Positions 417 to 63,285 of a stretch of 64,000 nt of DNA are shown here, one piece after another. The DNA is from Mytilus edulis (lineage: Eukaryota), in NCBI RefSeq assembly GCF_963676685.1, contig NC_092352.1, forward strand, positions 4,588,001-4,652,000. The letters are read 5' to 3'. Below the pieces are notes generated by a model. The model was not told the origin of the DNA and did no database searches. It was given only the letters and a program-made list of their open reading frames with translations. The position numbers and the translations under genes were made by a program. Position 1 is the stretch's first letter. Every line of letters starts with the position of its first letter.

Positions 417-670
417 CTGATCATATTTCAACGTTGAACCTCCAACTGAGATGCTATTCGATGTAACAAGCTGCTGTTCTAGATGATTTTTGACGTTATA
501 CCATCTCGGATCCCTGTTACTAAAACTGACACAATACAAAACAGCAAGGAATATCATATATAAAACTAGCTCTATGAATATCTCTTGCATTTTAAGGCGC
601 TGCTGTCTTTTTTCTTTCAATCTAGCAAGTTTCTTTGGTTTCAATGGAGCTTGCTTCTTTTGGTACACAT
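417..670 (-). CDS. PKD1L exon, TM6 and start of the extracellular TOP region
   Basis: 254 nt, phase 1-0; MQEIFIELVLYMIFLAVLYCVSFSNRD; donor CAG|gttagt. Confidence 0.9.
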
Positions 671-3600
671 CTATAGAAAATTAAGATAAACAGAACTTAG
701 GAAAGTTATGAATAGCAATAAAAAGGTCACTACACGCAATAACCTCTTTATGGACTGTAAATTATAGCCATATTGACATACTTACAGATTCCCTCTTGCT
801 GAAGGTTTTGCTTGATGATGTTTCGGTCCATTTACTATATTCTACCTAATAATGTCATGTTGACAAATAAGAAACTATGGTCCCAACTTCGCGAGGCACA
901 GTGTTCTTAGATGAGTTTATATTTAGCAAATATTTCAAAGTTTAAGGGTCCTTAATTTTGCCTTCAATCTGTGCCAATTTTACTATGACGTGTCGTACAC
1001 AATCATTCTCTACATCGGAAAAAATACACGCACTCCGTTTTTTGTAAAGGTCAAACATAAACGGTAGTGTGGCATATGAACCTATATGCCTCGGACTCTT
1101 TAGAGTTTAAACTTATAATAAAGTGCTGTACTACCAACAGATTGTTTAATTGATCAGTCAGACATAATTATTACAATAAAATCACGTGACAAAATGACGA
1201 TAAGATCAATAATAAGAACATCGTACCAAAAGAGAGGTGAAAGATATCAAAAGCGACATTCAAAATCAAAAATCGGGAATGAACTGAATACCCGGTGAAA
1301 ACTTTTTATTCGTTAAGTTATATTCTCGAAAAAAGGGTTGGATTGTAGATACCACAATTGACATTTCCGTGGTCTTAATAGAAAAACAGATATTCCATAA
1401 GTTTCAATAAACTCATCATAAATACCAGGATTAAATTTAGTATATACGCCAGACGCGCGTTTCGTCTACAAAAGACTCATCAGTGACGCTCGAATCCCAA
1501 AAAGTTAAAAAGGCCAAATAAAGTACGAAGTTAAAGAGCATTGAGAACCAAAATTCCTAAAAGTTTTGCCAAATACAGCTAAGGTAATCTATGCCTGAGG
1601 TAGAAAAGCCTTAGTATTTCAAAAAATTCAAATATTTTGTAAACAGTAATTTATAAATATAACCATATCAATGACAATTCATGTCAGCTCAAAAAGTGCT
1701 GACTACTGGGCTTGTGATACCCTCGGGGAAATAAATCTCCACCAGCAGTGGCATCGACCCAGTGGTTGTAAATAAACTCATCATACATACCAGGACTAAA
1801 ATTTGTATATACGCCAGACGCGCGTTTCGTCTACAAAAGACTCATCAGTGACGCTCGAATCCAAAAAAGTTAAAAAGGCCAAATAAAGTACGAAGTTGAA
1901 GAGCATTGAGAACCAAAATTCCTAAAAGTTTTGCCAAATACAGCTAAGATAATCTATGCCTGAGGTAGAAAAGCCTTAGTATTTCAATGATGATCAATTT
2001 TATATTTTTTTTTATTGATGACCGGAATGATTACTAGTTTTCAACCAAAAGCTGAACAATCAAATCAAATTTTTAAAAATGTAATTCTATGGGATTTTTT
2101 TTATTGAATATATGATCTTCTATAATGATGTCATACAAGCGTATTACTTCATAAGTTTAAATGAAAACGGGAAAAGGGGAAATAATGAGGTTGCACAATA
2201 AATAAGACTATGGAATTTATAGTTCAATTTAGACAAACTTTACCTAAAAGATATAAAAATGGACTTGTTGTACGTCTTTTCGTCTCCATAAGAAGTTTCT
2301 CTCTGTCGTATTTTCCAGTTTTTTCTTTATAACTTTTTACCATCCAGGAGAATACAAGCGACAGCAGTATGATCTAAAACCAAAGTGAAGTTTCAAAATA
2401 AAGGTAACTACATTTACTTTTTATCATGAGTTATATTTGTCCTTTAGTTCATATAAAATAATAGAAGTACTATACCCCATATCCTTATTTTATATATAAC
2501 ATGATAAATTAACATGTACACATTGAGTAAAATTTTTATTTCTGTTTAACTAAAAAGAAATATTAGATTAACTTTATAATGAAAAGATCCCAAATATTGT
2601 CAATTTACCAATTACATAGCGCTAACAATTCTCGTCCATAGTAAGACGTTTATATATCACAATTTATGCATTACGCTCGTTCATGTTCAACTGTACGGAC
2701 TTTATTTGCACGATTGTGATCCTTACATTAAAACTACCCCACCAAAGTAACAAGGAAGAACGAATAAAAACGACGCTATATGAGTAGTTACGGGCACCAG
2801 CAGGAATTGGTTGACTTATACGAAATGTCTATGTCTAACACACTAGCGACATGTTTACGACGTCTTAGATCGATTGTCAACAATTTCTTGTCTGATCTAT
2901 AATTTTATCGATTTTGAAATTCTGATTAAGTATGAATTACAATGATGTGTGATACACAGAGAGCAGTAGACTTTTAATCTCTCTGGGGAACCCAATAAAT
3001 AAAGGCAACAGTAGTATACAGCTGTTCAAAACTCATAAATCCACGGACAAAAAACAAAATCGGGGTAACAAACTAAAACCGAGGGAAACGCATCAAATAC
3101 AAGAGGAGAACAACGACACAACACCAAAATGTAACACACATAGTCAAAATCCCACGAGAATAACAAACATAACATATATATATATATAACATCAAAACCA
3201 AATACATGAATTTGGGATAGACAAGTACCGTGACACGTCTTATCGCAATGTGAATTTACACTAAAAAATGAGAGAAAACAAACGAAACTACGTTATAATG
3301 CAATACACACAGAAACGAACTATTATATAACAATGGCCATATTCCTGACTTGGTACAGGGCATTTTTAAAGGGAAAAAATGGTGGATTGAACCTGGTTTT
3401 GTGGCATGCCAAACCTCGCACTTTTATGGCCATGTGAAATATAACATCAAAATGACAACACAGGACTACAATATAAATAAATTGGAGAACACAATTGACA
3501 AAGAATCACACGAACAACAGCCAACAAAAGGCAACAAGTTCAAGTAAAACTCTTTTTATTTATATGATATGTTTCTCTGCTTCTTTGTTTGATCTTGAAC

Positions 3601-6600
3601 TGTCTTATTCATCAGTTGATAAAAATCTGAAGATTGATAAAGATCGGTAAACAGCTGATGTCTTTATTATAATTTGCGCCATGCATGATGTGCCGATCTC
3701 AAGGCAAGGGTTTATTATTCAGTAGTAGTTACTGATTTGCGCCTGTCACATATTTTGCAATTTGAAGTTTCATAATGAATCTGATTATACATTTTGTCCC
3801 CTTCTGTGGCCTTTTTGAGCTAGATTAGAGTGTTTTCGAATTTGTAAATAGTGCTATAAAATTAGATTCAAGCTCAGAAGCGCAGTGCCATAAATATTTG
3901 ACTGAGACATTAAAAGTTTAATATTTAGGTACGAATGTCAAATAGGGTTTTTAATGGACTTGAAACTTCGATATATTTTCGCAATCAATTTTCGTAAGAT
4001 GTAACACTACAAACGCTAATATTTTAGAAACTATAATCTGTGTCAGATGGATATGTTATATATCTAAAATATATATCAATGTTGATTATTGTATTCAATA
4101 TATGTTGATTTTAATTTGTGTTTCTGGAATCACTACGCATATATCATTTAATAGCTAAACACTGATGTACGATTCTACGTGTACAGCGAAACCTGGAATA
4201 TTTTACCTTAAGTGGATCAACGAGAAGCATCGATTCGATGAATGACACAAAGAAACATAGCAGCCATTCCTCTGACTTCGTCTTTCCCCATTCCATGCTA
4301 TACAGAATTAGAAAAAATCCGGATACAAAGACGGTTAATGTAACTATTCCCCATGCTACATATCTACACCAAAACGGAAGTGAAAATTGAGTGTCGTCTG
4401 TAAAATCTGCTTTAGGATGGGTTTCCGCATCGGTCTTGTCAGAGGTTTGAAGTGTCATGTCCTGGACTACGTCAGTATTTGGTAGAGGCTTCTTCTCGCT
4501 TGTTTTACGATGTCTCGAACTTCTAAACATATATGATACTAAGAATATTGGAGGTGCCGCAATTATGGCACTTATAAGTGAAATGTATATCCCAGAAAGT
4601 GATAATTTGATCGGTCCAATTGAAAAGTAACTGCTGGTATTTTGTCCATAAAACATTGCGTTTGAGATCATAGTAAGAAACAACAATGACAAACAACAAG
4701 CCAATCTTTCTATCCTTGTAAAGTTACTTTCTTCGGGTCGAATAGCAACCGATAGCCATAAGTGATTGTCTGTAGTGTTTTGTCTGGTTTCTTCGTGAAA
4801 TAAAAATGAGAATTTATGTTTATCCAACTTATCTGAAACAGGAATAGCACAATCAATGCAGCCATCATCGTGGTCCAAAGACAACCATTGATCACATATA
4901 AACAGATACCTGTCAAATAAACGAAAATATGTATTTATTGATATTACGGAAGCAGATGTATTTGAATTGTTTTTGGTAAAACATTTGTGTCTGTTTAAAT
5001 CAACACGTGTTTAAGATTACCTTAAATGTGTATAAAGGTTTTTATTGGATGTTATTTGTCGTATTGTTGGTATAATCTCCGAACATGTTCTTTAGGTACC
5101 GAAAGACTTATCTATAAAGGAATTTTTTGTTCTTGTATAAAAAGAAAAGGCTATTTATAATTCTTAAATACACATAATATTTTCTGTTTTGTAGATCGAT
5201 GTATGTTCATGTTGACTACATGGTTGTGTTTGACCCTGTATATGAATGATTGTTTTATATAATGTCTGAGAATAAGTCGTAATGTGTTTAAGCAGATCAT
5301 GGAGAAATTTGAACCGATTTTTTCAGAGTTTTACACGTTTGGTTTTTAGGGTATATTTCTCTCAAAAAGAGCTCATTTCTGGTATATGTATAGAGTTTTG
5401 TAGAAATATTTCATGCTCAGTAAAGCCTGACGAATTAGCACACGAAGAGGAAGAATGATAAGGTAAATTGTAAGCACCTTTAATTTAATAAATTTAATAA
5501 TTTACTTTTAATAAAAAGTATTATCAATCTACCAAAATCCGTCAGATTTACACAAGGCATTAATCTGTGTATTACCACTGGGTCGATGCCACTGCTGGTG
5601 GAGATTTATTTCCCCGAGGGTATCACCAGCCCAGTAGTCAGCACTTTTGTGCTGACATGAATTATCATTGATATGGTATATTTATAAATTTACTGTTCAC
5701 AAAATTTTGAATTTGTGAAACACTAAGGCTTTTCTAACTCAGGCATAGATTAACTTAGCTGTATTTAGCAAAACTTTTAGGAATTTTGGTCCTCAATGCT
5801 CTTCAACTTCGTACTTTATTTGGCCCTTTTAAACTTTTTTGGATTCGAGCGTCACTGATGAGTCTTTTGTAGACGAAACGCGCGTCTGGCGTATATACAA
5901 CATTTAGTCTTGGTATCTATGATGAGTTTATTTTCAAAATCCATAGTTGGTCTGAAATATGCGGTTGGCGTATAAAATTATAATCCTGGTACTTTTGATA
6001 ACTATTTACACCACTGGGTCGATGCGACTGCTGGTGGACGTTTCGTCTCCGAGGGTATCACCAGCCCAGTAGTCAGCACTTCGGTGTTGACATGAATATC
6101 AATTATATGGTCATTTTTATAAATTTTCTGTTTACAAAACTTTTGAATTTTTCGAAAAAAAAACCAAGGATTTTCTTACCCCAGGAGTAGATTACCTTAG
6201 CCGTATTTGGCACAACTTTTGGAAATTTTGGGTCCTCAATGCTCTTCAACTTTGTATTTGTTTGGCTCTTTAACTATTTTGATCTGAGCGTCACTGATGA
6301 GTCTTATGTAGACGAAACGCGCGTCTGGCGTATAAAATTATAATCCTGGTACTTTTGATAACTATTTATACCACTGGGTCGATGCCACTGCTGGTGGACG
6401 TTTTGTCCCCGAGGGTATCACCAGCCCAGTAGTCAGCACTTCGGTGTTGACATGAATATCAATTATATGGTCATTTTTATAAATTTTCTGTTTACAAAAC
6501 TTTTGAATTTTTCGAAAAACTAAGGATTTTCTTACCCCAGGAGTTAATTACCTTAGCCGTATTTGGCACAACGTTTTGGAATTTTTGGTCCTCAATGCTC

Positions 6601-9600
6601 TTCAACTTTGTATTTGTTTGGCTTTTTAACTATTTTGATCTGAGCGTCACTGATGAGTCTTATGTAGACGAAACGCGCGTCTGGCGTATAAAACTATAAT
6701 CCTGGTACTTTTGATAACTATTTACACCACTGGGTCGATGCCACTGCTGGTGGACGTTTCGTCCCCGAGGGTATCACCAGCCCAGTAGTCAGCACTTCGG
6801 TGTTGACATGAATATCAATTATATGGTCATTTTTATAAATTTTCTGTTTACAAAACTTTTGAATTTTTCGAAAAACTAAGGATTTTCTTACCCCAGGAGT
6901 AAATTACCTTAGCCGTATTTGGCACAACTTTTTGGAATTATGGGTCCTCAGTGCTCTTCAACTTTGTATTTGTTTGGCTTTTTAACTATTTTGATCTGAG
7001 CGTCACTGATCAGTCTTATGTAGACGAAACGCGCGTCTGGCGTATAAAATTATAATTCTGGTACTTTTGATAACTATTTACACCACTGGGTCGATGCCAC
7101 TGGTGGTGGACGTTTCGTCCCCGAGGGTATCACAACCCCAGTAGTCAGCACTTCGGTGTTGACATGAATATCAATTATATGGTCATTTTAATAAATTTTC
7201 TGTTTACAAAACTTTTGAATTTTATCGAAAAACTAAGGATTTTCTTACCCCAGGAGTAGATTACCTTAGCCGTATTTGGCACCACTTTTTGGAATTTTGC
7301 GTCCTCAATGCTCTTTAACTTTATTTTTTGTTTGGCTTTTTAACTATTTTGATCTGAGCGTCACTGATGAGTTTTATGTAGACGAAACGTTCGTCTGGCG
7401 TATAAAATTATAATCCTGGTACTTTTGATAACTATTTACACCACTGGGTCGATGCGACTGCTGGTGGACGTTTCGTCTCCGAGGGTATCACCAGCCCAGT
7501 AGTCAGCACTTCGGTGTTGACATGAGTATCAATTATATGGTCATTTTTATAAATTTTCTGTTTACAAAACTTTTGAATTTTTCGAAAAAAAACCAAGGAT
7601 TTTCTTACCCCAGGAGTAGATTACCTTAGCCGTATTTGGCACAACTTTTGGAAATTTTGGGTCCTCAATGCTCTTCAACTTTGTATTTGTTTGGCTCTTT
7701 AACTATTTTGATCTGAGCGTCACTGATGAGTCTTATGTAGACGAAACGCGCGTCTGGCGTATAAAATTATAATCCTGGTACTTTTGATAGCTATTTATAC
7801 CACTGGGTCGATGCCACTGCTGGTGGACGTTTTGTCCCCGAGGGTATCACCAGCCCAGTAGTCAGCACTTCGGTGTTGACATGAATATCAATTATATGGT
7901 CATTTTTATAAATTTTCTGTTTATAAAACTTTTGAATTTTTCGAAAAACTAAGGATTTTCTTACCCCAGGAGTAAATTACCTTAGCCGTATTTGGCACAA
8001 CTTTTTGGAATTTTTGGTCCTCAATGCTCTTCAATTTGTATTTGTTTGGCTTTTTAACTATTTTGATCTGAGCGTCACTGATGAGTCTTATGTAGACGAA
8101 ACGCGCGTCTGGCGTATAAAACTATAATCCTGGTACTTTTGATAACTATTTACACCACTGGGTCGATGCCACTGCTGGTGGACGTTTCGTCCCCGAGGGT
8201 ATCACCAGCCCAGTAGTCAGCACTTCGGTGTTGACATGAATATCAATTATATGGTCATTTTTATAAATTTTCTGTTTACAAAACTTTTGAATTTTTCGAA
8301 AAACTAAGGATTTTCTTACCCCAGGAGTAAATTACCTTAGCCGTATTTGGCACAACTTTTTGGAATTTTGGGTCCTCAATGCTCTTAAACTTTGTATTTG
8401 TTTGGCTTTTTAACTATTTTGATCTGAGCGTCACTGATGAGTCTTATGTAGACGAAACGCGCGTCTGGCGTATAAAATTATAATCCTGGTACTTTTGATA
8501 ACTATTTACACCACTGGGTCGATGCCACTGCTGGTGGACGTTTCGTCCCCGAGGGTATCACCAGCCCAGTAGTCAGCACTTCGGTGTTGACATGAATATC
8601 AATTATATGGTCATTTTAATAAATTTTCTGTTTACAAAACTTTTGAATTTTATCGAAAAACTAAGGATTTTCTTACCCCAGGAGTAGATTACCATAGCCG
8701 TATTTGGCACCACTTTTTGGAATTTTGCGTCCTCAATGCTCTTTAACTTTGTTTTTTGTTTGGCTTTTTAACTATTTTGATCTGAGCGTCACTGATGAGT
8801 CTTATGTAGACGAAACGTTCGTCTGGCGTATAAAATTATAATCCTGGTACTTTTGATAACTATTTACACCACTGGGTCGATGCCACTGCTGGTGGACGTT
8901 TCGTCCCCGAGGGTATCACCAGCCCAGTAGTCAGCACTTCGGTGTTGACATGAATATCAAATATATGGTCATTTTTATAAATATTCTGTTTATAAAACTT
9001 TTGAATTTTTCGAAAAACTAAGGATTTTCTTACCCCAGGAGTACATTACCTTAGCCGTATTTGGCACAACTTTTGGGAATTTTGCGTCCTCAATGCTCTT
9101 TAACTTTGTTTTTTGTTTGGCTTTTTAACTATTTTGATCTGAGCGTCACTGATGAGTCTTATGTAGACGAAACGCGCGTCTGGCGTATAAAATTATGATC
9201 CTGGTACTTTTGATAACTATTTACACCACTGGGTCGATGCGACTGCTGGTGGACGTTTCGTCTCCGAGGGTATCACCAGCCCAGTAGTCAGCACTTCGGT
9301 GTTGACATGAATATCAATTATATGGTCATTTTTATAAATTTTCTGTTTACAAAACTTTTGAATTTTTCGAAAAACTAAGGATTTTCTCACCCCAGGAGTA
9401 GATAACCTTAGCCGTATTTGGCACAACTTTTGGGAATTTTGGGTCCTCAGTGCTCTTCAACTTTGTATTTGTTTGGCTTTTTAACTATTTTGATCTGAGC
9501 GTCACTGATGAGTCTTATGTAGACGAAACGCGCGTCTGGCGTATAAAACTATAATCCTGGTACTTTTGATAACTATTTACACCACTGGGTCGATGCCACT

Positions 9601-12600
9601 GCTGGTGGACGTTTCGTCCCCGAGGGTATCACCAGCCCAGTAGTCAGCACTTCGGTGTTGACATGAATATCAATTATATGGTCATTTTTATAAATTTTCT
9701 GTTTACAAAACTTTTGAATTTTTCGAAAAACTAAGGATTTTCTTACCCCAGGGGTAAATGACCTTAGCCGTATTTGGCACAACTTTTTGGAATTTTGGGT
9801 CCTCAATGCTCTTCAACTTTGTATTTGTTTGACTTTTTAACTATTTTGATCTGAGTGTCACTGATGAGTCTTATGTAGACGAAACCCGCGTCTGGCGTAT
9901 AAAATTATAATCCTGGTACTTTTGATAACTATTTACACCACTGGGTCGATGCCACTGCTGGTGAACATTTAGTCCCCGAGGGTATCACCAGCCCAATAGT
10001 CAGCACTTCGGTGTTGACATGAATATCAATTATATGGTCATTTTTATAAATTTTCTGTTTACAAAACTTTTGAATTTTTAAAAAACTAAGGATTTGTTTT
10101 TAACCAAGGAGTAGATAACCTTAGCCGTATTTGGCACAACCTTTGGGAATTTTGGGTCCTCAGTGCTCTTAAACTTTGTATTTGTTTGGCTTTTTAACTA
10201 TTTTGATCTGAGCGTCACTGATGAGTCTTATGTAGACGAAACGCGCGTCTGGTGTATAAAATTATAATCCTGGTACTTTTGATAACTATTTACACCACTG
10301 GGTCGATGCCACTGCTGGTGGACGTTTCGTCCCCGAGGGTATCACCAGCCCAGGAGTCAGCACTTCGGTGTTGACATGAATATCAATTATATGGTCATTT
10401 TTATAAATTTTCTGTTTACAAAACTTTTGAGTTTTTCGAAAAACTAAGGATTTTTTTTACCCCAGGAGTAGATTACCTTAGCCGTATTTGGCACAACTTT
10501 TTTGAATTTTGGGTCCTCAATTCTCTTCAACTTTGTATTTGTTTGACTTTTTAACTATTTTGATCTGAGCGTCACTGATGAGTCCTATGTAGACGAAACG
10601 CGCGTCTGGCGTATCAAATTATAATCCTGGTACTTAAATTAACAAAAGTTTGTAAGGTTTAAATAAGTTGACCATTTTGGAATGTTCATGAACTACATAT
10701 TGTCTCTTGTCATTCCTGCTGAAAAAAAGCAGTACAAAATTAAAACAAAAATTCATTTTATTTACTCTTATCAATATACGGTTGAAAACTCTCATTGATA
10801 CATACATAGATGTATAGTTCTGTATAGGATCTTATTCATTAAAGGTAAACAATTAATTAGGTTTGTTAGCTTTACCTTTCACTAGTTTGTACATCCTCCA
10901 GTATTATCTTATTAAGATACCATGATGCCGAATTTCCTTGTCCACTATTATCATGCCAAATTTTTAACACCGACGGATCATTTATTGGTCCAGATACACT
11001 CATGACAAATTTCCGGATACTACCAACACCAAAACCCTATATCATAAATAAAACAACTTTGTTATGCCCGCTAAATAGTCATTTTCCTGTCCGATTTCAG
11101 TTGTCTTTTATTATATCTAATTTTATCTGTCATTTGAAGAATTTGTGGTGGGCAGATATATTGCTCCCTTTTAATTTTTAAATTGTTTTATTTTATTTTA
11201 TAGACTATGGACGGCTAAAGTCTAGCTACATTTTATAGACATCTGCCCATTGTTCATAATTGTTTGATGCCCTTTAGATTTATTATTTTATTGTGGTTGG
11301 GTTTGAAATATAACCAGCATTTAATATTCATAACAAAAAAGAGGAGGAATGTACCAAGGTCCATTAAACATCAAAGTTGATGTATTTAAAACAAACAACG
11401 CCGTTGCAACCCTCCCCAAATAATGAACACACATCAGTCTAAAGCTTACGACCGAGAAACACAAACAAAATTTGTGAGTGATCACAGGTGTTCCGATTTG
11501 GTTAGCAGACCCTGCTCGCAAAATGAATTATTTAACTACAGGTTGACCCGATCTTTGGTGGTCATAAACAAATCACATCTGCATGATCATTGTTGTGAGG
11601 ACTAAAAGGGAATGTCATACGTGAAATTGTCTTGCAACAACACGGTCACTGTTTCCTGTCTGTAACATTCTTATTGCATATAATTCAGATGTTCATTGCT
11701 AAGTCTAGACAATATTGAAACGCAACAATGTTTTTAAATGATTTTTGATTTACATCCTATGTCGTTTTCATATTCCAGTCAATACATTTCACTTATGAAT
11801 GTTCACTATACAGAATTCCTTTACAGGCGTTACATGAATAAAATCGGCGCGACACACGTTTTTATGGTCACCATCACGAATTGGTGACCGATACGATGTG
11901 TTTTTGTTTGTTGTATGTTTGTCGTATATTTGAACATAGGTTTTTAATCTGTTTTACCAAAGTCAGGAGCCTTTAATTCAGTGGTTGTCGTTTGTTCATG
12001 TGTTACATATTTGTTTTTCGTTCATATTTTTACATAAATAAGGCCGTTAGTTTTCTCGTTTGAATTGTTTTACATTGTCTTATCGGGGCCTATTATAGCT
12101 GATTATGCGGTATGGGCTTTGCTCATTGTTGAAGGCCGTACGGTGACCTATAGTTGCTAATGTCTGTGTCATTGTGGTCTTTTGTGGATAGTTGTCTCAT
12201 TGGCAATCATACCACATCTTCTTTTTTATATTACCACACAAATGTATGTAACTACAATTTTCCACATGCAAAGTTCACGTGTTTTATCATAAATTTAAAT
12301 CATAAACGATTTTATTTCACTACATTTATAAACAGAAAACTCACTCGATGTGTTTCGTCATCTAATAGTCGTATATCTGGTTCATAAAAATGGCTTTTCG
12401 TTGGTTTGCCATCAATTATCATGAAACCTATTCTTGATTTTGTTCCAGCATGTCTGTGTAGTCCTGTGAACACCGTTAGAATGTACAAGTAATCGTCGTA
12501 AGGTCCGTTGTCACTTAGGTATGATAAGGCCCACTGTAATAGTTACATTAAAACGTCAGTCATAATAAGAGAAATGTTTAATTGTTTTTCAGTTTTAATA

Positions 12601-15600
12601 CAGAAGTCTCCTTTCATTGACAATGTTAAAATCGAAGCCCATCGTTTATTTCTTTTCAATAAAAGGATAGCTATTGATGTCTGTTTGGATCTATTTATTT
12701 CTCAGTAAATGTCTCTGACGTATTAGCTACAGATGTTTTATGTATTCATATGTATGTATAAAGAAAATACTTATGCTCAAGTGTTCTCATTTGTACTTCC
12801 AATTTTTCCCTTTGGTTAGAATGAATGTTGTTTTTTGTATGCATGCTATCATAATCGAATGTACTACCTTAAACACTATACCTTAATGTATATCATGATG
12901 TATGTACATGGGATATGCATTGGGTTGATGGTATAGCTTGTTATTGTATACACATCCGACTTTATTATACTTTTCCAGAAGGAATCAGAACTTACGTTGT
13001 TACTTTTGTTGTACTTGTGTTGTAATTAATAAAAGACAATATTGATACACATCAGTTATAATTGTTTCTAGTAATTTAAAGTTAAGCTTTTTTATCTAGG
13101 GTTATATGTTTTGCTATCCGCTGACTTTATTTCGTTGAAACCATGGGTGTTATTCAACTTGTCATGAACTCCATATGCTATCATTTATTATATATCTTTA
13201 GTACTGCCGGTTACATAATTATAACGTTCAGTTTTGGGGAAAATATACATACCGTGTAATTTTTTTATAAATCAGCCATCAACATAACCCTTGTTGATCC
13301 TGTTTGTTCTGTCTAAATAGCAACATACTTAAATAAATATACATTATGTGTCAAGTATAATTAGTCAATTACATTATCCTTGTTTGATCCGTTCTGTCCC
13401 GTCTAAATGTCCATATACATAACAAAGTATAAATTATATGTTAAATGTTTTGTAAATTATCCAAAAACATTACCCTTGTATGATCCTGTCTGTCTTGTCT
13501 AAATGCCCATACACATAACAAAATAAACAACAGTACCAGTGATACAACTGTTGCAAACACCGCTGCATTGTTTTTTAAATCAAACTTTTCAAAGACACTT
13601 CCAAAATCGATCGTGTTTGGAGGCACGTAGAAAGTTGTGGCAAAACTGTTTCCGGGTGGACTGGAACATTCACAAACAGTCTCAGTGATTGTTGATGAGA
13701 CAGAAAGCTAAATAATAGAAAAATGGGTGTAGAAAGCATCATTTATATACAATACAATTATAGGCTAGTCAAGAGCAACTGGTATCACACCTGGCTTTTT
13801 ATGGGGTTGATACTGCTCTTTCATTTTCTATGTACTGTTGTGAAGACTTTTGCTCGCCTTTTCATCGATTTACGTTGTTTGTCTTTTTTATTGGTTTGAT
13901 CTCGACCTCTGAAGTTTGTTTATACCTTTTGTTTTCTTTTACTTCTTTTTACATTACATTAAATAAAAAAGCTACTTTATAAATTTGCATGATGCCTCTT
14001 AGCATTTTTGTATTAACCTCCATCTGGAACGCTGAAAACCATAAAATTTAAAGCAGTGCTTTCGGTATAATCCAGGAACTATATAACCAAAAAGGGACCT
14101 AAGTAGATACATATTACCAAAACTATCATGACGTCAACTTTGCCTAAAGGAGGAAAATCCTTAGATTCATAATCATTCTTAATTCATCAACGTATATTCG
14201 TCAGTGGCGAATATATGACTAATTATTCCACAAACAATGGTTTTCTGTGCTGGATAATGAATATAACACTAATAAATCTGCTTCGTCCGAAAGGTTGGAT
14301 GTTTCTATAATTCTTGGGTGCGAACTTTAGGAATACTATTAAAAGAACATGCCATTATTCTGCAACAAGAAATAATTGCAATTGTTTTCTTGTCAATATT
14401 TGAAAGTGATGATGCAATGATATACGTGAACGTTAAAGGAAATAATATAAAATGATATTACGTTATCTGTCTGAATTTAGGACAAAGAATATTAATACAT
14501 TTTTTTGTATATAAAACAGTTATGAAATGGGCTGAAAGAAAGGGTATATTAGTAAAGATATGTAGGTATTATTGAATTATATGATGTGTTAGTAATATGA
14601 ACTGTGTGAATTAATCGATTCGTTATTTAATATTGCGTATATACTAAACAAGGATATAATCTATATATCTTTTCAGTTACACTATGACTATCAATCTTTC
14701 AAATTATAAGTGACCTAAAAAATAAGAAGATGTGGTATAATTGCTACATGAAAATTATTCTAGATATGGTATTGCTCATGTACAATCTATTTCAAAATCG
14801 GTTAATTGGAAACATGGAAATTAAAAATAGGTTATAAACAAGGAGCCAAATCTCGGATGAGTTATGAAATTCCGATTGTCTTTTGCTTTTTATCGTCAGA
14901 TAATATAAATACATTGACCTTATGACAGAATTGAAACAGGGACTAGTATCACTGAAATAGCCGTATCAGAGGAGTAATTGTTATCAACGTGTTCAATATT
15001 GTTTTTGAATAAACAACAAAAAACTTAAATATTATTACTCGAAAGAGACGACATGCGTGCTAAAGTTAGAGTTCCTTCTCTGTCATAGAATATTACGTTT
15101 AGATTAAAAACGAACATGTTCCTTCGATGCACATTTTTCAATGGGCTCTACAAGGAGCGGCAAGGTTATAAGGTTGTTGGTGCAACGTTACCCATAGGGA
15201 GTATTTGTATGATGGTCTTGAATACCAAATTGAAATAGGACTACATTAATCATAAAAGACAAAATGTTAACCAGAATCATACCTGACATGACGTTTTGTT
15301 CCATTTCTGCTTTACAGTATCCCATACTCTACAACCAACCGTAGCACCAATAATTTCATATTCAACAATGGTAGTACTTAATGACCTTCTTCTTCTTGGT
15401 AATGTTGGTGCGGAAGCTTTTTCTGTTATTTTATAAACAACACAACGAAAAACAAACCGTATAATGGATATGAATTTGATAACACATAAAAAGTAAAATC
15501 ACAAAAATACTGAACTTAGAGGAAAATCAATTCGGAAAGTCCATAATCACATGGCAAAATCAAATAACAAAACGTCTGAAAAACGAATGGATAAGAATTG

Positions 15601-18600: not shown

Positions 18601-21600
18601 TGTTTTTATTGTCTGTTGATCGTTTTTATTTTCCTGGTTTTTTTTTTGGTTTTTTTTTATCTTTTTTTTATCATGGTGTTGTCTGTTGTCTTTGAGCTTG
18701 GTTTTTGATTGACTTCTTTGCATTTTGGTTCTCTCTCCTTTTAAATGGAAAACAATGTTAAGGACGTTTAAAAAACAGAAAGGAGTTTGAACTTAATAAA
18801 GTTTGAGGTGGGACTTTTTCCTTATCTTTCTTTTTAGATTGAAACTTTTTAATGAAAGAAATACGCTTCTCCATATTTCACATTCTAAAATAAAAAAAAT
18901 AAAAAAAATCTTATGTATTTAGTATTGCAATTCGTATTTTACGAGACCTGGTGTTAAAATATTTTAGAAACGATGAATAGCTGATATGCACAATTGTTTT
19001 TCTTGAATTAAATTTAATTGCTGGACAGATTTGTTATAGTAAAAGTGCAATGATAAGTTAATATTGATATTGAAAGACCTTCGAACAAAACGGGATGTTA
19101 AGATCACAGAGCCCGAAGAACGAGGGATTTGAAGCGCCCGTTTTGTGAGGATGTCTTATAATAGCAATGTAAACTTATCATTGAATATTTTCTTACTTGC
19201 AATCCGTCAAAAACGTAAGAAAAGTCCACATAAAAAGTACTTGAAGAAGCCTTACTCCTCTTAATTTGACGAGTCTAAATATATATTCAACTTAAATGAT
19301 AGTAAACAGAAGTCAGACTGATATATACAAATAACAGTTACCTAATTGCATTGAAAACAGACCGATTAAATGACAGTACATCATTTAATTATTTAATTAT
19401 TATCAAGTTTGTAGCTTTAAATTAACACCATAGAATAGTTTATAAATTTAAGGGATAGATTTATATTTGTGAATTCCAACGTTTCAAATGAACGATTTTT
19501 TTTCTTATAAAAGAGTAAATCAAAATCCTTTACAACTAGCTAATGGATGATCAGTGCAAGAACTATTTGATGTTTTTAACCTGTCAGTTATGATGAAATA
19601 GATTCGGCAAAGTCCAGACCATATGAAAACAGTAAGTAAACCTCTTCCAACAATTAGTTATTTTTAAAAACAGCTTGTTAAACAATTTTGAATCGAACAG
19701 ACCTAAATAATCATAAATGCATAAGGTCCTTCATACTATTCAGGTAGATGTTTTTTTTTTTTTTTTTTTTGGGGGGGCGAGGGGGGATTGACTCTGAAAC
19801 TCGCCTACACTATTTATTAAAAAAACTATGCCTTTGGACTTAAATGAATAATAGTTATCAAAGTTACCAGGCTTATAATTTGATACGCCAGACGCGCCTT
19901 TCGCCTACATAAGACTCATCAGTGACGCTCAGATCAAAAATAATAGCAATTGCTTTGAAATAGTCTAAATGTAACATCTTTAGAATCATGTAATGTGGGT
20001 TTGAGTGGCTCCATCAAAACGTGTATAAATAACATATTTTGGCAAGGTTGATCATCATTCTTAAAATGAAATACAATGTATTACATGAAAACACACACTT
20101 TTATTTTAGTCATCCGTCATTCCCTTTACACGTCTAAATGAAGCATAAACCCCTTGAAAAACAATCCCTTTTTTTAGTTGTATAACTGTCTGACATAATG
20201 ATATATAATAGATCATAATAAAACAGAAGTTCAAACAGTTGTTAGAAAATATTTAAAAAAAAATTAGATATTAATGTTCAGTCATGTATAGTTAATAACA
20301 AAAACGTAACTAAAAAATGAAAAAAAAAGTTTGCACTATTATTGAGTGATAAAAATGGTAATTTTACATTATAACATTGTACAATATCTTGTCTTTGTGT
20401 ACTGTTTACATGGAATAATTTATGAAGTTGATTGATTGTTGTTTGCCTAACTTCCGGTGGCATGTTAACGACGAGAACACATAAATTTGAAATACAATAT
20501 ACGTCTTGCAATAGGAGGTTGGACGGGAAACTTGGAATGCCACTGGAAAATGAGTAAAATTGAGAATGGAAATGGGGAATGTGTCAAAGAGACAACAACC
20601 CGACCAAATAAAAAACAACAGCAGAGGGTCACCAACAGGTCTTCAATGTAGCGAGAAATTCTCGCACCCGGAGCCGTCCTTAAGCTGGCCCCTCAACAAA
20701 TATATACTAGTCCAGTGATAATGAACGCCATACTAATTTCCAAATTGTACACAAGAAACTAAAATTAAAATAATACAAGACTAACAAAGGCCAGAGGCTC
20801 CTGACATGGGACAGGCGCAAAAATGCGGCGGGGTTAAACATGTTTGTGAGATCTCGACCCTCCCCCTATACCTCTAACCAATGTAGAAAAGTAAACGCAT
20901 AACAGTATATACTGGATAAGGACAGAAATATAGCCTTGCAACAGCTGGCCACATTCGGACCCCTAAAATAATTGGTGCAAGAATTTTTAATTTGCAGAGA
21001 GCGTTGGTGCATGGAATCTACTCTGAAGTCGGTCATCGATATCTACGTGTAGTTTCCAATATCATTTAACGTATCCAATTATGGTTAGATATATTTAGTT
21101 CGCTTTAGTAACTGTGAGAATTCTATGAAACTGTATTATTTATTGTACTTGAGTTTTGGTATGTCATTCTATTTTACCGACCGCCAGGATGGTCTCGTTG
21201 GAGCGTGTTTCTCGAGAGCGACCAGGTCAAACAAAGATGTTGAAATTGGTATTTTCTGTTTCAACGTTTAACATGCGGCATTTACGAGTAAGATAAAAGA
21301 CTGGTCGGCTCGGAGTCAGAGTAGGGTGACTTTTCATCATTTATTTTTCCGTTACTATATAGTGAAGTGATTTTCTTGTACTAGTTTATATAACACCTTC
21401 TTTGATTTCCACTGATCGAAATTAAAAAGGGCAGGTGATATTTTTCAACCACACAAAATGAGCTTGTGTCTGTTGGGATATCTTTGACGGTAAATAATAT
21501 TATATTAAATGTGCCTGTTGGGATATCACTGACGGTAATAATATTAAATTAACTCCGCATTTTTTAGTCATGGGGTGGTTTTGGGCTTATTATTATGTAT

Positions 21601-45600: not shown

Positions 45601-48600
45601 CATTTTATGCCAATCAATTGAGCTAATCTTAGCAAATCCGTTAAAAATGTTTACCAAATATTCCATCAAACATTGATCAGAGTCGTCAATGACAAGTTTA
45701 AGGAATCCTTCGATTCCGATTAGTTCTACTAACTGTGTTGCATTTTTTATGTAAGATTTAACATATTTAAAGCTATCCAACAAATCCTGCAGGTCATATG
45801 CAAATTGTTTCGATACATTTGCGTTTTGCAGCCATTCAAGTAGATTATCAAAAAAAGTAGCATTAGCACTTGCAGGCAACCCAGAAAGTTCACGTAATTT
45901 ATACAAACTATCAAGAGTCAACGAGCTGTCAGATAACCTTTCAAAAAAGTCGTCTGTATCCCGTAGAAAGGCTTCAGATTCTTCATTATATAAATCATTA
46001 AGAAATGCTAACATTTCATTTAAAACCAGTGTGTTATTATCTGGAAAAGGTAGGACATACTGTGTGTCTTTCAATTCGGATTTAGGTTTTGACTCCATTT
46101 CATACATAAAGTCAATATAAAAAAATCGCGTAAGAGCAATCAGATCATAAAGAGGCGCTGGTGTAGTTTTGTCCGGTGTAGTTGTCTCCAGTGCAGTTGT
46201 GTCCATTGCAGTTGTCATTGTTACAAATGATGTCGCTGGAGAAGTGTTGCTTGCTTTTGTTTTCACTTGGGGGTATTTGTCATGTTCAGCCTGGACGTAA
46301 AACTTACTTCCAAGCATGCATTGGGAATTAGAATTCTTTAAGCTATTTACAACGGTGTAAAGTGTAGAACCATCGATGAACGCGACTTTGTTTTCTATAT
46401 ACGGAATAAAGTTAGTTTCGTACCACTTCTTTTTATAGTCACGTATATCCTTAAACGCTGATACTGGTTCAATATTAAATTGCAGTAGATTATAGATACT
46501 ATTTGTGACAAAATTAAGACATATCCAAGTAAAAATAAGCCCAGATGGATCACCAGGGCCTTTAGTTAAACTAAACGACACAGAACGAGCATCAAATTCT
46601 ACGAGTCCTTGACCAATAGTCCTTCCGGCTCCACCTTTTATAAATGCATGTGGTGGTGGTTGTTCTATTTTCACATACATTGATTCTTCCATCCATTCTG
46701 TCATGCTTGCAGGATATCCTACTCTTGCATACAAACGATAATATCCTATTTCATGTTGTCCTGGGTTAAACTTGAACATAGCACTGTAATCATTCCCCCA
46801 CACCTGAACTTCGTTATTAGGAGTTATGTTAGTTATCTTGTATAATGCAAAATAGGTATGCATTATAGTTGCTGTTGTACAATTGTTTTTCGTCAGCAGG
46901 TATATATCCACTTGTGAAGAGGTATAAATTGACATAGCATTTTCTATTTTAAGAAATTTGTCGCTAAACATTTGGTATGTAAGACATGGAGGAACAACTG
47001 CAAAATACAATAAGTTTATCATCAAAAGGCATTAAAAGAAAAAACCCAAATTGAATAGAGTATAAAAGTATGGCAAAAAAGTAAACTAAAGTATCGAACG
47101 TCAAGGTAAATTCATAAAGTAAAAAAAAAAACTGACACAATTAGTAATAAGTTTTAGCTATCTAAATATTGCGGCCTTGGGCATCATTGACGAGACGTTA
47201 ATANNNNNNNNNNNNNNNNNNNNNNNNNNNNNNNNNNNNNNNNNNNNNNNNNNNNNNNNNNNNNNNNNNNNNNNNNNNNNNNNNNNNNNNNNNNNNNNNN
47301 NNNNNNNNNNNNNNNNNNNNNNNNNNNNNNNNNNNNNNNNNNNNNNNNNNNNNNGACCTTCACCACGATAGACTCACCTTGTAAAATTTCATTTTTAATA
47401 ATTTTTTTCGTCCTGGATCCACATGACATATCTGTCACGGGCCGTTAATAACAAAAAACCAGACAAATAACATTCGAAGGCATTCGTCGGGAATTCGGGT
47501 AGTGTTAATAATAAACACTTTAATTAGGTATTTTTTTTTATAAAACTATTCATTTCTAACGCTTGTCTTCTTTTTTTAATATGTTTAAGGAACCTACATT
47601 ATAGTCTAATAATCAGTTGCGATCAATTAATATTAATTGACATAGAAGCCTTATTTTGAGTTCAATATCTCTTAGTACTATTATTCCTTACCTCTGCAAT
47701 TTCCTTCAGTCTGATCTACTCCTATGCAGTATTCGCCTCCACAAATATTAACTGGATTATCACATTTTCGTGATCGTAGATAAGTACCAGTTCCGTAAAT
47801 GCCAGAATTAGTCTTAATGCAGTTCCCCAAAGCTCCCCATTCTCCCCATTGTCCTGCTACAGGTCCTAGTGAAATAACATAAACTGCGTTATATATTTTA
47901 CTTTATTGTTTTATCTATGTTAATGTTGTCTTCTAATGGAGAATGTCGAATTTCCTTTTAATTTTTTTTACATGTTCCGATGTTTTATGTATTTTGCGAT
48001 GTCTTTGGGTTATAAAAAAGACCCAAATCAATCAACTATTACATGATGCGTAATCATATATTAAGATGCATCATTATGTTTTACTAAATTAATAGTGGCA
48101 TACCAAACTACTCATAGGTAAAGGGACTATTGGTAATTTTAGAACAACTTCAGTACAACTGTGATTTTAATGATTAATCTTTAACAGTAGTTTTCTCTGT
48201 TTTTTTAACTGTTGTTTGCCATTTTGTCTTGTTATTTAGCAATGATATTGTCTATTTTGTCAAATTATGTTTTTTTTTTTGCAATCTTAGATTTACTCCC
48301 CTGTTTATGTAAAGAAACTTATTGAAATGTCAAAATATTATTACTCGATTGAACTTGAACGACCAAATTTGGCTATGGTGTTATTTGCTATTTGTTTTTG
48401 TTTTGTTTTGTATTTCTTTAATTTACATATGACTGACACTCTTTCATAAAATGAGCAATTCTGCAAGAATCTTTTCACGCTTTTTTTTCAATTCCAGAGC
48501 TCTTACCTAACTGCTTTGTATTTACACATCAGTCATTTCTAATACCTACCAGTATTACATCACTATTAACCGTAGTCTCTATCGCTATACTTTCAGAATG

Positions 48601-60660: not shown

Positions 60661-63285
60661 TAGAAGAAGGTACAGAAAGAACATCAGCATTTAAAAAAAT
60701 AATATGAAGAATAGGGAACCAAAAATCGTCTTTTTCCGTTAAGTCATAAAACAAATTTTGAAAACAAATCGTAATTCTAATAAAAAACTAAGACAACATT
60801 CATCAACGCTAATGATATATAGGTGAAAAGTGAAACTAGTAAACCTAAAAAAATTATCCGAAATGGCCATTTTGGTATGGACAGCTCTTTAAAGATTGAA
60901 TAAATCGATGAGACACTTTGAGTCTTTCCGTCCATTTTCAGATTTATACACTGCGGTAAACTCATGACTGTTCAGACACTTGTTTTTCTTTGTTGACATA
61001 TTTGTTTGTTTTTATAGTGATTAAGATTATAACACAATGTTGACTGCTGTATCCCATTTTTGACATTTTTACTAATTATGTCCGCTTGTTTTGTTCACAC
61101 ATTGTTGTCAACATAATGGAATTTTATGCGATTGTCATACAATTGAGAGCTAGCTATAGAACCAAGTTTAATCCACCATTTTCTACATAAGGAAATGTGC
61201 GTATCAAGTCAGGAATTTACAGTTGTTTTCCATTTGTTTGATGTGTTTGACCTTTCAATTTTGCATTTTGATTATGGACTTTCCGTTTGAATTTTCCTTG
61301 GAGTTCGTTATTTTTGTTATTTTACTTTTTACTTGTTCGCTTGCTGTTAATTAAGATCTGTTAAGTCTACTTTCCGACTGTGAAGTAGATGTTATTTAAC
61401 TGTACACATAAACATCATACTAACAAAGAAGGTACCAAAGAATCATTCAAACTCATACATGTCATAAGTCGAAAATAAACGGACAATGATATTGCAACAA
61501 CAAAACAAACGAGAAAAAAAAACAACAAGAGACATGAATTGTCTGCAAAGTGCAAATGTATAAATAGCAGTGAATTAATCGTATTGCATAAGTCTGAACA
61601 TTGACGGGAAAATTTGACACGACTTAATGATAAATTTTTCGGTCTTTTCAGATGTTGGTAACATCAAAATGAACATTTAAGACTAAAATGCATTTTACTG
61701 GTTACTGGTGTAACATACATGTTTCCATTAGGGTTTAAAATTTTACAAACAAATAAAAAAGACAGGAGGAACAAACAAAAAACCTTAATATAATAAATCA
61801 AAAGACAGGAGGAACAAACAAAAAACCTTAATATAATAAATCAAAAGCAATCTACATTAAATAGGCGTGTTTTGAACACATTTTTGGTCAACGGAAGTGA
61901 AGGATTTTAAAATGGTTGAACCTTGATAAGAAAGAACATCTATTCTAAGCGATTAATAAAAGTTTCATATATATTCAATCATTTATTTAATCGTTAAAAC
62001 TACGATTTGTATATACTGTCTATGTAAGTGTTATATAAAGGAAAACCATCATCTATATCATTTTTGTAACATAAATTGGATTTTTTCCTTTGATGTTTTT
62101 ATGAAATAATTTGCTTAAAAAGTGTGGTGAGGGAAAACCATGGTATATCATATGCAAATTTATGTTGTACCATAGTTTGCTAATTAAATATACAACTCGA
62201 CTAGAATCTAAAGGAAAAAAGGCGGAGCTTCAGCCATGGTATAACATATTCATTTTCATGTTATTCCATGGCTGAAGCTCCTCCTTTTTTTTTTTTTTAA
62301 ATGTATCCGCCTCTAAAATATTAAGGAAACTGTAAGACGTACTAAAAGGTCAAGATCTTCATTTGTTTTCATTTTATAAGAAAAAGCAATAAATTATGTG
62401 TACCACATTTCAAGAAACCCTTTTCAAACTACATAGAATTGTTACGAATTCCCTTAATTTTGGAAACAATTACTAAATGTTTCTTCTTTCAGTTTTGAAA
62501 AAAATAAAATGTAAAACTATCATTTCCTTTGCGAAAATTCAATTTAAATTCGATTTAAAAAGGGGGTACCTATACAAAAAGGAATAAATATCGGCTACAA
62601 ATATCTGTGAAAAAACATGATTATAGGGGACATACACTATCTACGCCCTGGATCCGCCACTGTTAAAATATTGTTTTATCATTAAAATTGTGTTTTAATA
62701 AATACTCTAATAAAATAACGGAAGAGAAGCATTTTTCAATTAGATGAAAATTCTGTAAAATATGATTAACTTGTATGATACATTAAAAAAAAATGAAAAC
62801 AATTCTTACTGGAATCCGACATTTTTGTTTACCTCAGTCTGATGACATTATGAAATTACCTGCGCCTACAATCATACACGGGGCGCAAAACTAAAAACCA
62901 ATCGGGGAAAATCCGACATTTTCTTTACTTTCTGCAAATTCAGGGGTTCTATTACATGAAGTACAAAGACGACCATACACGAAGCGCAAAAGTGACTTGC
63001 GCGAGCTTCCATTTCATTGGATAAAACTGTAACGTGATCAATTTCCAATATTAGTTGAAGGTCTTGAAGCTGTAAATCATTTTATCTATATTACAAATTT
63101 CATATACCATGTGTCTTACTCATTAACATATTTAAACAAACTCATCCTTCGGATTCGTTTGTTTAAATAAGTTAACTCGTAAAAACCATGGTATATATAG
63201 TACTTATAATATAAAAAAGAAATTTGGTATGATTGCCAATAAGACAACTCTCCACAAAAGACCAAATTACTCAGAAATAAACAAA

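What the first reader, a model, noticed from the sequence alone, without database searches (positions are those of the whole stretch)
1407..1985. Two intact ribozymes sit sense to the host pre-mRNA and could cut it and excise a 365-nt circle
Seen: unlike the big array, these two perfect hammerheads (1811-1854, 1446-1489) are on the transcribed strand of the intron 671-2243, which separates TM5 from TM6. Two copies is the minimum for the dimeric active fold. Inference: each PKD1L transcript could self-cleave in this intron and release nt 1816-1452 as a monomer or circRNA driven by the host promoter. Cleavage would compete with splicing and could uncouple the receptor part from the channel-like C-terminal part.
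Basis: partly seen in the sequence, partly recalled or inferred. Interest (0 to 1): 0.8.

Follow-up and report, generated by a model that had tools for sequence, protein, structure and literature searches.

The report
Mussel retrozyme copy in polycystin intron
This is one ordinary copy, out of more than ten thousand in this mussel-type genome, of an already described mobile element that carries self-cutting hammerhead RNAs; it happens to lie in the sense direction inside an intron of a polycystin-1-like gene, and nothing shows that it affects that gene.

Summary
Two identical type-I hammerheads lie on the minus strand at 1446-1489 and 1811-1854. They bound a 365-nt unit (1816 to 1452). The intron 671-2243 has GT..AG ends, and an RNA-run contig joins its flanking exons. 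The host gene is polycystin-1-like, and the intron falls between TM5 and TM6.

The element is not special. It belongs to the published Mytilus non-LTR retrozyme family (Cervera and de la Pena 2020). Its ribozyme matches letter for letter the cloned Mg353 ribozyme, which cuts slowly (about 0.1 per min) from a construct carrying one copy. The exact core occurs 11,714 times in this genome. The copy is a 5'-truncated insert with the family's fixed 3' end and a 7-bp target duplication (ATTGAAA). A paralog 0.56 Mb away keeps the empty site.

Reads show no cutting here. Two raw RNA runs have no reads on the host exons. Retrozyme reads carry other copies' letters, and no ends pile up at the predicted sites. 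Slow hammerheads placed in introns are reported not to hinder splicing. Release of some monomer by read-through is the published general model. The scan has already noted at least eight other sense-intron copies in this genome. I rate it ordinary and of low interest.

The parts
1409..1981 (-). Retrozyme insertion proper, about 1.6 units, 5'-truncated at unit position about 195. BLAST to the family reaches 1406-1987 because the target duplication overlaps family sequence.
1402..1408 (-). Target-site duplication, 3' copy (ATTGAAA in gene sense)
   Evidence: The empty site in paralog L013 reads GATCATCATTGAAACTTAC
1982..1988 (-). Target-site duplication, 5' copy (ATTGAAA in gene sense)
1811..1854 (-). 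Upstream type-I hammerhead; predicted cut between 1817 and 1816
   Evidence: identical to the Mg353 ribozyme
1446..1489 (-). Downstream type-I hammerhead; predicted cut between 1452 and 1451
1452..1816 (-). 365-nt unit that double cleavage would release; 36.7% G+C; no open stretch over 50 aa
671..2243 (-). Host intron, 1573 nt, phase 1, GT..AG
   Evidence: Joint 670/2244 in an RNA-run contig; splice sites read
447..670 (-). Host exon holding TM6 (S1). The open frame runs on to 402; the lower exon end was not determined.
2244..2373 (-). Host exon, 130 nt (end of TM5 and the TM5-TM6 loop)
   Evidence: joints on both sides
4207..5010 (-). Host exon with TM2-TM5. The upper end was not determined; the open frame runs to 5010.
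5559..5937 (+). Copy of the same 365-nt family in opposite orientation, two introns upstream in the same gene. It could pair with the sense copy in the pre-mRNA.
   Evidence: I1-I5, 89-93%; duplex -584 kcal/mol
5849..10612 (+). Array of 14 hammerhead units (about 356 nt each), antisense to the gene

Best explanation
The stretch 1402-1988 is one retrotransposed copy of the known Mytilus non-LTR retrozyme. This is a promoterless, non-coding repeat of about 365 nt whose units each carry a type-I hammerhead.

Shown by anatomy: it was inserted by a target-primed, 5'-truncating reverse-transcription process. It has the fixed 3' end of the family, a variable 5' end and a 7-bp target duplication. It went into the TM5-TM6-loop intron of one member of a locally duplicated polycystin-1-like gene family, after that gene had split from its paralog.

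Inferred: because it lies in sense, host transcription makes an RNA with two competent hammerheads. [quoted passage not shown] This would happen in the pre-mRNA or, more often, in the excised intron. An RtcB-type ligase may circularise the unit. Cleavage is slow relative to intron removal, and slow intronic hammerheads do not stop splicing, so the expected effect on host mRNA is small. The copy is a passenger, not a regulator.
For: Identity:
- Hammerhead hits and exact core matches.
- 3,683 first-look relatives of the unit, with 95-96% identity for the best.
- 11,714 exact cores in the genome, control 0.
- The ribozyme is identical to, and the unit clearly homologous with, the cloned 'Rtz Genom mussel Mg353'.
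- Family traits as published: 350-390 bp units, low G+C, about 5,000 copies, circRNAs. Here G+C is 36% and there is no ORF.

Insertion mechanism:
- 10 of 10 copies end at unit position 45-50, while their 5' ends differ.
- Paralog L013 has the empty site, and ATTGAAA is duplicated in the window.

Host:
-.

Small effect:
- kobs about 0.1 per min.
- The canonical monomer fold is weak (-6.7 kcal/mol; helix III costs +0.8) and an inactive hairpin is favoured (-14.1).
- Slow intronic hammerheads leave splicing intact.
- Read-through transcription is the published model.
- Both sense and antisense intronic copies were noted elsewhere in this genome (unchecked notes).
Against: - There is no direct evidence that this copy is transcribed or cut.
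- Two raw RNA runs have zero depth on the host exons and the unique intron.
- At this copy's private sites almost all reads carry other letters: position 1689, 0 of 52 reads; position 1786, about 10 of 218.
- The spliced contig in run X6 shares 8 of 11 listed variants with the paralog, so it cannot be assigned to this gene.
- In-vitro T7 rates may not hold in mussel nuclei.
- In a tandem pair the far more stable double-hammerhead fold might speed cleavage.
- A 2026 preprint finds retrozymes somewhat depleted from Xenopus introns, so genic copies may carry some cost.
Confidence: 0.7

Rival explanations
1. One reading: the two sense ribozymes cut a large share of host pre-mRNAs before splicing. 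This lowers or gates expression of this paralog, and the host promoter becomes a real source of a 365-nt circRNA.
For: - The catalytic cores are intact and identical.
- The double-hammerhead fold is strongly favoured over two weak monomers (-31.5 against -13.4 kcal/mol).
- About 1.1 kb of intron must still be transcribed after the first site.
- The CPEB3 intronic ribozyme is a precedent for tuning by competition with splicing.
- Retrozymes are modestly depleted from Xenopus introns.
Against: - The measured rate of the identical ribozyme is slow.
- Slow hammerheads in introns do not block splicing.
- No read ends fall at the sites, and this copy's alleles are absent from the RNA.
- The insertion is young and absent from the paralog.
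- The HHRs show no sign of selection: 0 differences in 44 nt where 1.4 are expected.
- Thousands of similar copies exist.
- Cut fragments would lack a cap or a tail, so there would be no 'uncoupled' proteins.
Confidence: 0.07
2. Inert in this context: the hammerheads do not cut in the host transcript. Either they are trapped in the more stable inactive hairpin, or they are paired with the antisense copy (5937 to 5559) transcribed earlier in the same pre-mRNA. No unit is released from this locus.
For: - The MFE of each ribozyme, alone and in the 702-nt context, is a non-catalytic hairpin (-14.1 against -6.7 kcal/mol).
- A duplex of about 380 bp with the upstream antisense copy is possible (-584 kcal/mol).
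- No reads carry this copy's letters.
Against: - The same ribozyme in a very similar unit did cleave during transcription in vitro.
- The upstream intron may be spliced out before the sense copy is made.
- The absence of reads is uninformative, because the host gene was silent in the raw-read samples.
Confidence: 0.2

Closest known systems
Mytilus galloprovincialis non-LTR retrozyme (cloned unit Mg353; Cervera and de la Pena, NAR 2020, PMC7229834)
   Same: The ribozyme is the same letter for letter from helix I to helix I. The unit is homologous and of similar size (365 against 353 nt). G+C is low, there is no ORF, and the genome holds thousands of copies in dimers and arrays.
   Different: Nothing essential. 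This is one particular copy, 5'-truncated, lying sense in a gene intron.
Penelope-like elements and their non-autonomous retrozyme derivatives (bioRxiv 10.64898/2026.07.22.740005; PMC8557442)
   Same: The insertion signature is the same: 5' truncation, a constant 3' end, a short target duplication, and a hammerhead in the terminal repeat.
   Different: No reverse transcriptase or GIY-YIG gene is present here. The partner PLE in this genome was not identified here.
Conserved intronic ribozymes of amniotes (HH9/HH10 hammerheads; CPEB3 HDV-like ribozyme, PMC10919898)
   Same: A self-cleaving RNA lies sense in an intron and could compete with splicing.
   Different: Those are single-copy and conserved at orthologous positions over long times, and for CPEB3 an effect was shown by experiment. 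Here the copy is young, absent from the paralog, and one of thousands.
Newt satellite 2 and axolotl retrozyme hammerheads (double-hammerhead dimers)
   Same: Helix III is very short with a palindromic loop (ACGCGCGU), so two motifs can pair into an extended helix III.
   Different: The amphibian motifs need the dimer for good activity. The mussel motif cleaved from a construct with a single copy.

Membership tests
Metazoan non-LTR retrozyme (Mytilus family) | Type-I hammerhead with intact catalytic core (CUGAUGA ... GAAA ... GUC cut site) and helices I-III | tested here: met
   RF00163 scores 32.5 bits, E 3.4e-4 (GA 34), at both sites. The core is exact. Helix I has 6 bp, helix II 4 bp, helix III 2 bp plus a GCGC loop.
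Metazoan non-LTR retrozyme (Mytilus family) | Head-to-tail units of about 350-390 bp, one ribozyme per unit | tested here: met
   365-nt spacing; repeat 1406-1622 / 1771-1987.
Metazoan non-LTR retrozyme (Mytilus family) | Sequence homology to the cloned, self-cleaving mussel unit | tested here: met
   Compared by eye with the Mg353 construct in the supplement. 49 nt around the ribozyme are identical and the rest is clearly alike. It was not aligned by a tool, because sequence from a paper was not typed into tools.
Metazoan non-LTR retrozyme (Mytilus family) | Low G+C; non-coding; no LTR, PBS or PPT | tested here: met
   36% G+C; longest open stretch 50 aa when read circularly.
Metazoan non-LTR retrozyme (Mytilus family) | High copy number, dispersed and in arrays | tested here: met
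   11,714 exact cores; 3,683 first-look matches of the unit.
Metazoan non-LTR retrozyme (Mytilus family) | Expressed as linear and circular RNA of unit length | tested here: inconclusive
   Family reads are abundant in four runs. None can be assigned to this copy, and short reads cannot show circles in a tandem repeat.
Host-serving intronic ribozyme (HH9/HH10, CPEB3 type) | Kept at the homologous position in related genes or species | tested here: not met
   Paralog L013 has the empty site. Orthologs in other species could not be searched.
Host-serving intronic ribozyme (HH9/HH10, CPEB3 type) | Cleavage of the host pre-mRNA in vivo with an effect on mRNA level | tested here: inconclusive
   No ends at 1816/1817 or 1451/1452. 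The host gene was silent in both raw-read runs.
Polycystin-1-like (PKD1L / PKD-REJ type) host gene | 11-TM layout: TM1-5 part, then polycystin domain and PKD channel; REJ region upstream | tested here: met
   6a70_B E 2e-20. PKD_channel 2.8e-42 and Polycystin_dom 7e-26. REJ is only weak (22.5 bits, GA 25). PLAT and GPS exons were not confirmed.

The most novel reading that the evidence does not exclude
The young sense insertion changes how this one paralog is processed. Either ribozyme cutting attenuates its mRNA, or the newly created inverted pair (sense copy 1987-1406 with antisense copy 5937-5559, about 380 bp, bracketing exons 4207-5010 and 2244-2373) drives dsRNA formation or exon back-splicing. 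The empty-site paralog 0.56 Mb away would serve as a natural control.
Probability: 0.06. Interest if true: 0.5.

Novelty: already known. Interest (0 to 1): 0.13.

Why it matters
In itself it matters little. It is one more copy of a described mobile element in the kind of place where such copies often land.

Two things are of modest use. First, the filled gene and its empty-site paralog in one genome form a ready natural control for asking whether a sense intronic retrozyme costs its host anything. Second, the held literature reports some depletion of retrozymes from Xenopus introns but no orientation analysis.

Tried and rejected
- The Rfam gathering search found nothing because the motif scores 1.5 bits below the cut-off. 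The E-value search was needed.
- Pfam on single exons was mostly blank. PDB sequence search on exons 402-680, 12315-12542 and 13444-13707 gave nothing.
- Folding the 365-nt unit gave no unusual stability (z -0.09), so the linear fold gives no support for a rod-like structure.
- Reads gave no verdict on cutting. The host gene was silent in both raw-read RNA runs, run X1 is of guessed kind, and its contig stops where 31-letter words become repetitive.
- I first took the X6 spliced contig as proof that this very gene is spliced. I withdrew that after finding at least 8 paralogs and 8 of 11 variants shared with L013.
- An orientation-bias test was considered and dropped. No gene annotation is available, and the paralog cluster would yield too few independent insertions.
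- Three papers (PMC2933863, PMC2755206, PMC3334697) are not held. Dye 2006 and Fong 2009 are cited only second-hand.
- The N run at 47204-47354 was left alone.

Full report
**What is there**

Read on the minus strand, the stretch holds two identical type-I hammerhead motifs.
- The 32-nt core matches exactly at 1817-1848 and 1452-1483. The window has 16 matches at up to three mismatches, against none in 100 shuffles.
- Rfam's Hammerhead_1 model scores both at 32.5 bits (E 3.4e-4) at 1811-1854 and 1446-1489. That is 1.5 bits under the gathering score, which is why the default search was blank.
- The cut after GUC falls between 1817|1816 and 1452|1451.
- The repeat 1406-1622 / 1771-1987 differs at 7 of 217 positions, none of them in the ribozymes. 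With 1.4 differences expected in 44 nt, that is no sign of selection.

**The host**

- An RNA-run contig (X6, 593 nt) lies on the minus strand as 4399-4207 | 2373-2244 | 670-447. Both skipped parts end CT..AC, which reads GT..AG in gene sense. This fixes the intron 671-2243 (1573 nt, phase 1) and the neighbouring intron 2374-4206.
- Exon 4147-5010 matches human polycystin-1 (6a70_B, E 2e-20). The match includes the membrane segment before the PLKV motif.
- Exon 447-670 carries the next membrane segment.
- The exons just left of the window (locus L012) carry Polycystin_dom (7e-26) and PKD_channel (2.8e-42).
- A weak REJ match (22.5 bits) and weak TSP1 matches lie upstream on the same strand.

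**What it is**

The unit belongs to the Mytilus retrozyme family described by Cervera and de la Pena (PMC7229834). They report about 5,000 type-I hammerheads in M. galloprovincialis, in repeats of 350-390 bp. These are expressed as abundant circRNAs. A cloned genomic repeat cut itself at about 0.1 per min.

The supplement prints that clone (Mg353). Its ribozyme, from helix I to helix I, is identical to the window's, and the rest of the unit is plainly the same family (compared by eye).

In this 1.37-Gb, 14-chromosome-scale assembly:
- the unit has 3,683 first-look matches, and the best are 95-96% identical;
- the exact core (either loop-2 variant) occurs 11,714 times, against 0 for the control.

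**How it got there**

In ten copies compared with their flanks, the 3' end is always at unit position 45-50 (...GATGAGTTTATTT), while the 5' end falls anywhere. This is the signature of target-primed reverse transcription with 5' truncation.

The host gene has at least eight paralogs on the same chromosome at 88-95% identity. One of them, at C9:5.149-5.156 Mb (L013), aligns through both flanks at 90-93% and lacks the element. It reads ...GATCATCATTGAAACTTAC.... The window reads ...GATCATC[ATTGAAA]TACTAAGG ... GAGTTT[ATTGAAA]CTTATGG....

The element is thus a discrete insertion of about 573 nt with a 7-bp target duplication, and it is younger than the gene duplication. A contig of run X1 that is 4.4% diverged runs from the unique intron 27-30 nt into the element. 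This suggests the insertion is also present in another individual, but the bridge is one letter short of the tool's own criterion.

**Does it cut the host RNA?**

No read shows it.
- In two raw-read RNA runs (12.7 and 8.7 million reads sampled), depth is zero on all host exons and on the unique intron.
- The reads on 1406-1987 are 95-99% alike and nearly all carry other letters at this copy's private sites: position 1689, 0 of 52 reads; position 1786, about 10 of 218; position 1801, about 9 of 230.
- No pile of read starts or ends falls at 1816/1817 or 1451/1452.
- The spliced X6 contig shares 8 of 11 listed variants with paralog L013, so it cannot be assigned to this gene.

The data neither show nor exclude cutting, because the gene was silent where ends could have been seen.

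**Plausibility**

- Energetics. The monomer hammerhead fold is weak (-6.7 kcal/mol). Its 2-bp helix III costs +0.8, and an inactive hairpin is preferred (-14.1). The palindromic ACGCGCGU allows a double-hammerhead at -31.5, against -13.4 for two monomers.
- Timing. At 0.1 per min, about 10% of sites would be cut in one minute and about 40% in five. This is my inference from the in-vitro rate. After the first site, 1,146 nt of intron remain to be transcribed.
- Effect on splicing. Hammerhead-cut introns were still spliced (Dye 2006), and only fast ribozymes abolished splicing (Fong 2009), as told in PMC2995048 and PMC10919898.
- Expression model. Retrozymes carry no promoter and are thought to be expressed by read-through (PMC7761336).
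- Fate of cut fragments. A cut, unspliced transcript would lack a cap or a poly(A) tail, so it would be degraded rather than yield separate 'receptor' and 'channel' proteins. This is general knowledge.

**Context**

A 2026 preprint reports that 42-44% of Xenopus retrozymes lie in introns, with modest depletion relative to intergenic DNA, and gives no orientation analysis. This scan's unchecked notes list at least eight other sense-intron and five antisense-intron retrozymes in this genome. One follow-up judged such copies ordinary.

**Verdict**

The element is an ordinary, already described retrozyme copy. Some host-driven release of the 365-nt unit is likely when the gene is on. A meaningful effect on the host is unlikely and untested.

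Noticed in passing
window 5559-5937 (+) with 1406-1987 (-): The sense insertion created an inverted pair with an older antisense copy of the same 365-nt family. The partners lie two introns apart and bracket exons 4207-5010 and 2244-2373. A duplex of about 380 bp (-584 kcal/mol) is possible in the pre-mRNA. It could mask the ribozymes, feed dsRNA pathways or favour exon back-splicing. Paralog L013 has a matching antisense piece (about 72-79% identity, L013 1671-2056) but not the sense one.
   Followed up: partly
L001-L010 (copies of the unit elsewhere in G000): All ten copies end at the same unit position (45-50, ...GATGAGTTTATTT), and their 5' ends vary from position 7 to 358. Reverse transcription therefore seems to start at one fixed site about 46 nt past the cut site and to run round the template for 1.1 to 4 units. 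Several copies keep only one complete ribozyme.
   Followed up: partly
G000:C9, 2.3-7.9 Mb (places listed): The polycystin-1-like gene is one of at least nine linked paralogs (88-95% identity in the TM6 exon) on one chromosome, which indicates a local gene-family expansion.
   Followed up: partly
L012 2023-2223, 3740-3940, 5456-5656 and the end of 7173-8561 (minus strand): The coding 3' end of the gene (...NNTTTKDKMKLSPDYILSKEVPKQIEIIRQEAAKQIEMV...) recurs four times at a period of about 1.7 kb downstream of the gene. This is a tandem duplication of the last-exon tail and its flank.
   Followed up: no
window 2876-3680: A stretch of the neighbouring intron has very high depth on both strands in all four runs, and nearly all reads carry other letters. 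It is another expressed, high-copy repeat of unknown kind.
   Followed up: no
window 19891-19922 (-): A third, sense-strand hammerhead relic has 3 mismatches. One of them breaks the second pair of helix III (G opposite G), so it is probably dead.
   Followed up: no
window 1421 and 1786 (homologous sites of the two repeats): The two repeat copies carry two different letters (A and C on the + strand) where almost all family reads carry G. These are either two independent changes at one site or a heterogeneous template.
   Followed up: no
window 62197-62304: A long perfect hairpin gives sub-threshold matches to several unrelated miRNA models on both strands (40-46 bits, all far under gathering). 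It looks like an inverted-repeat element rather than a known miRNA.
   Followed up: no
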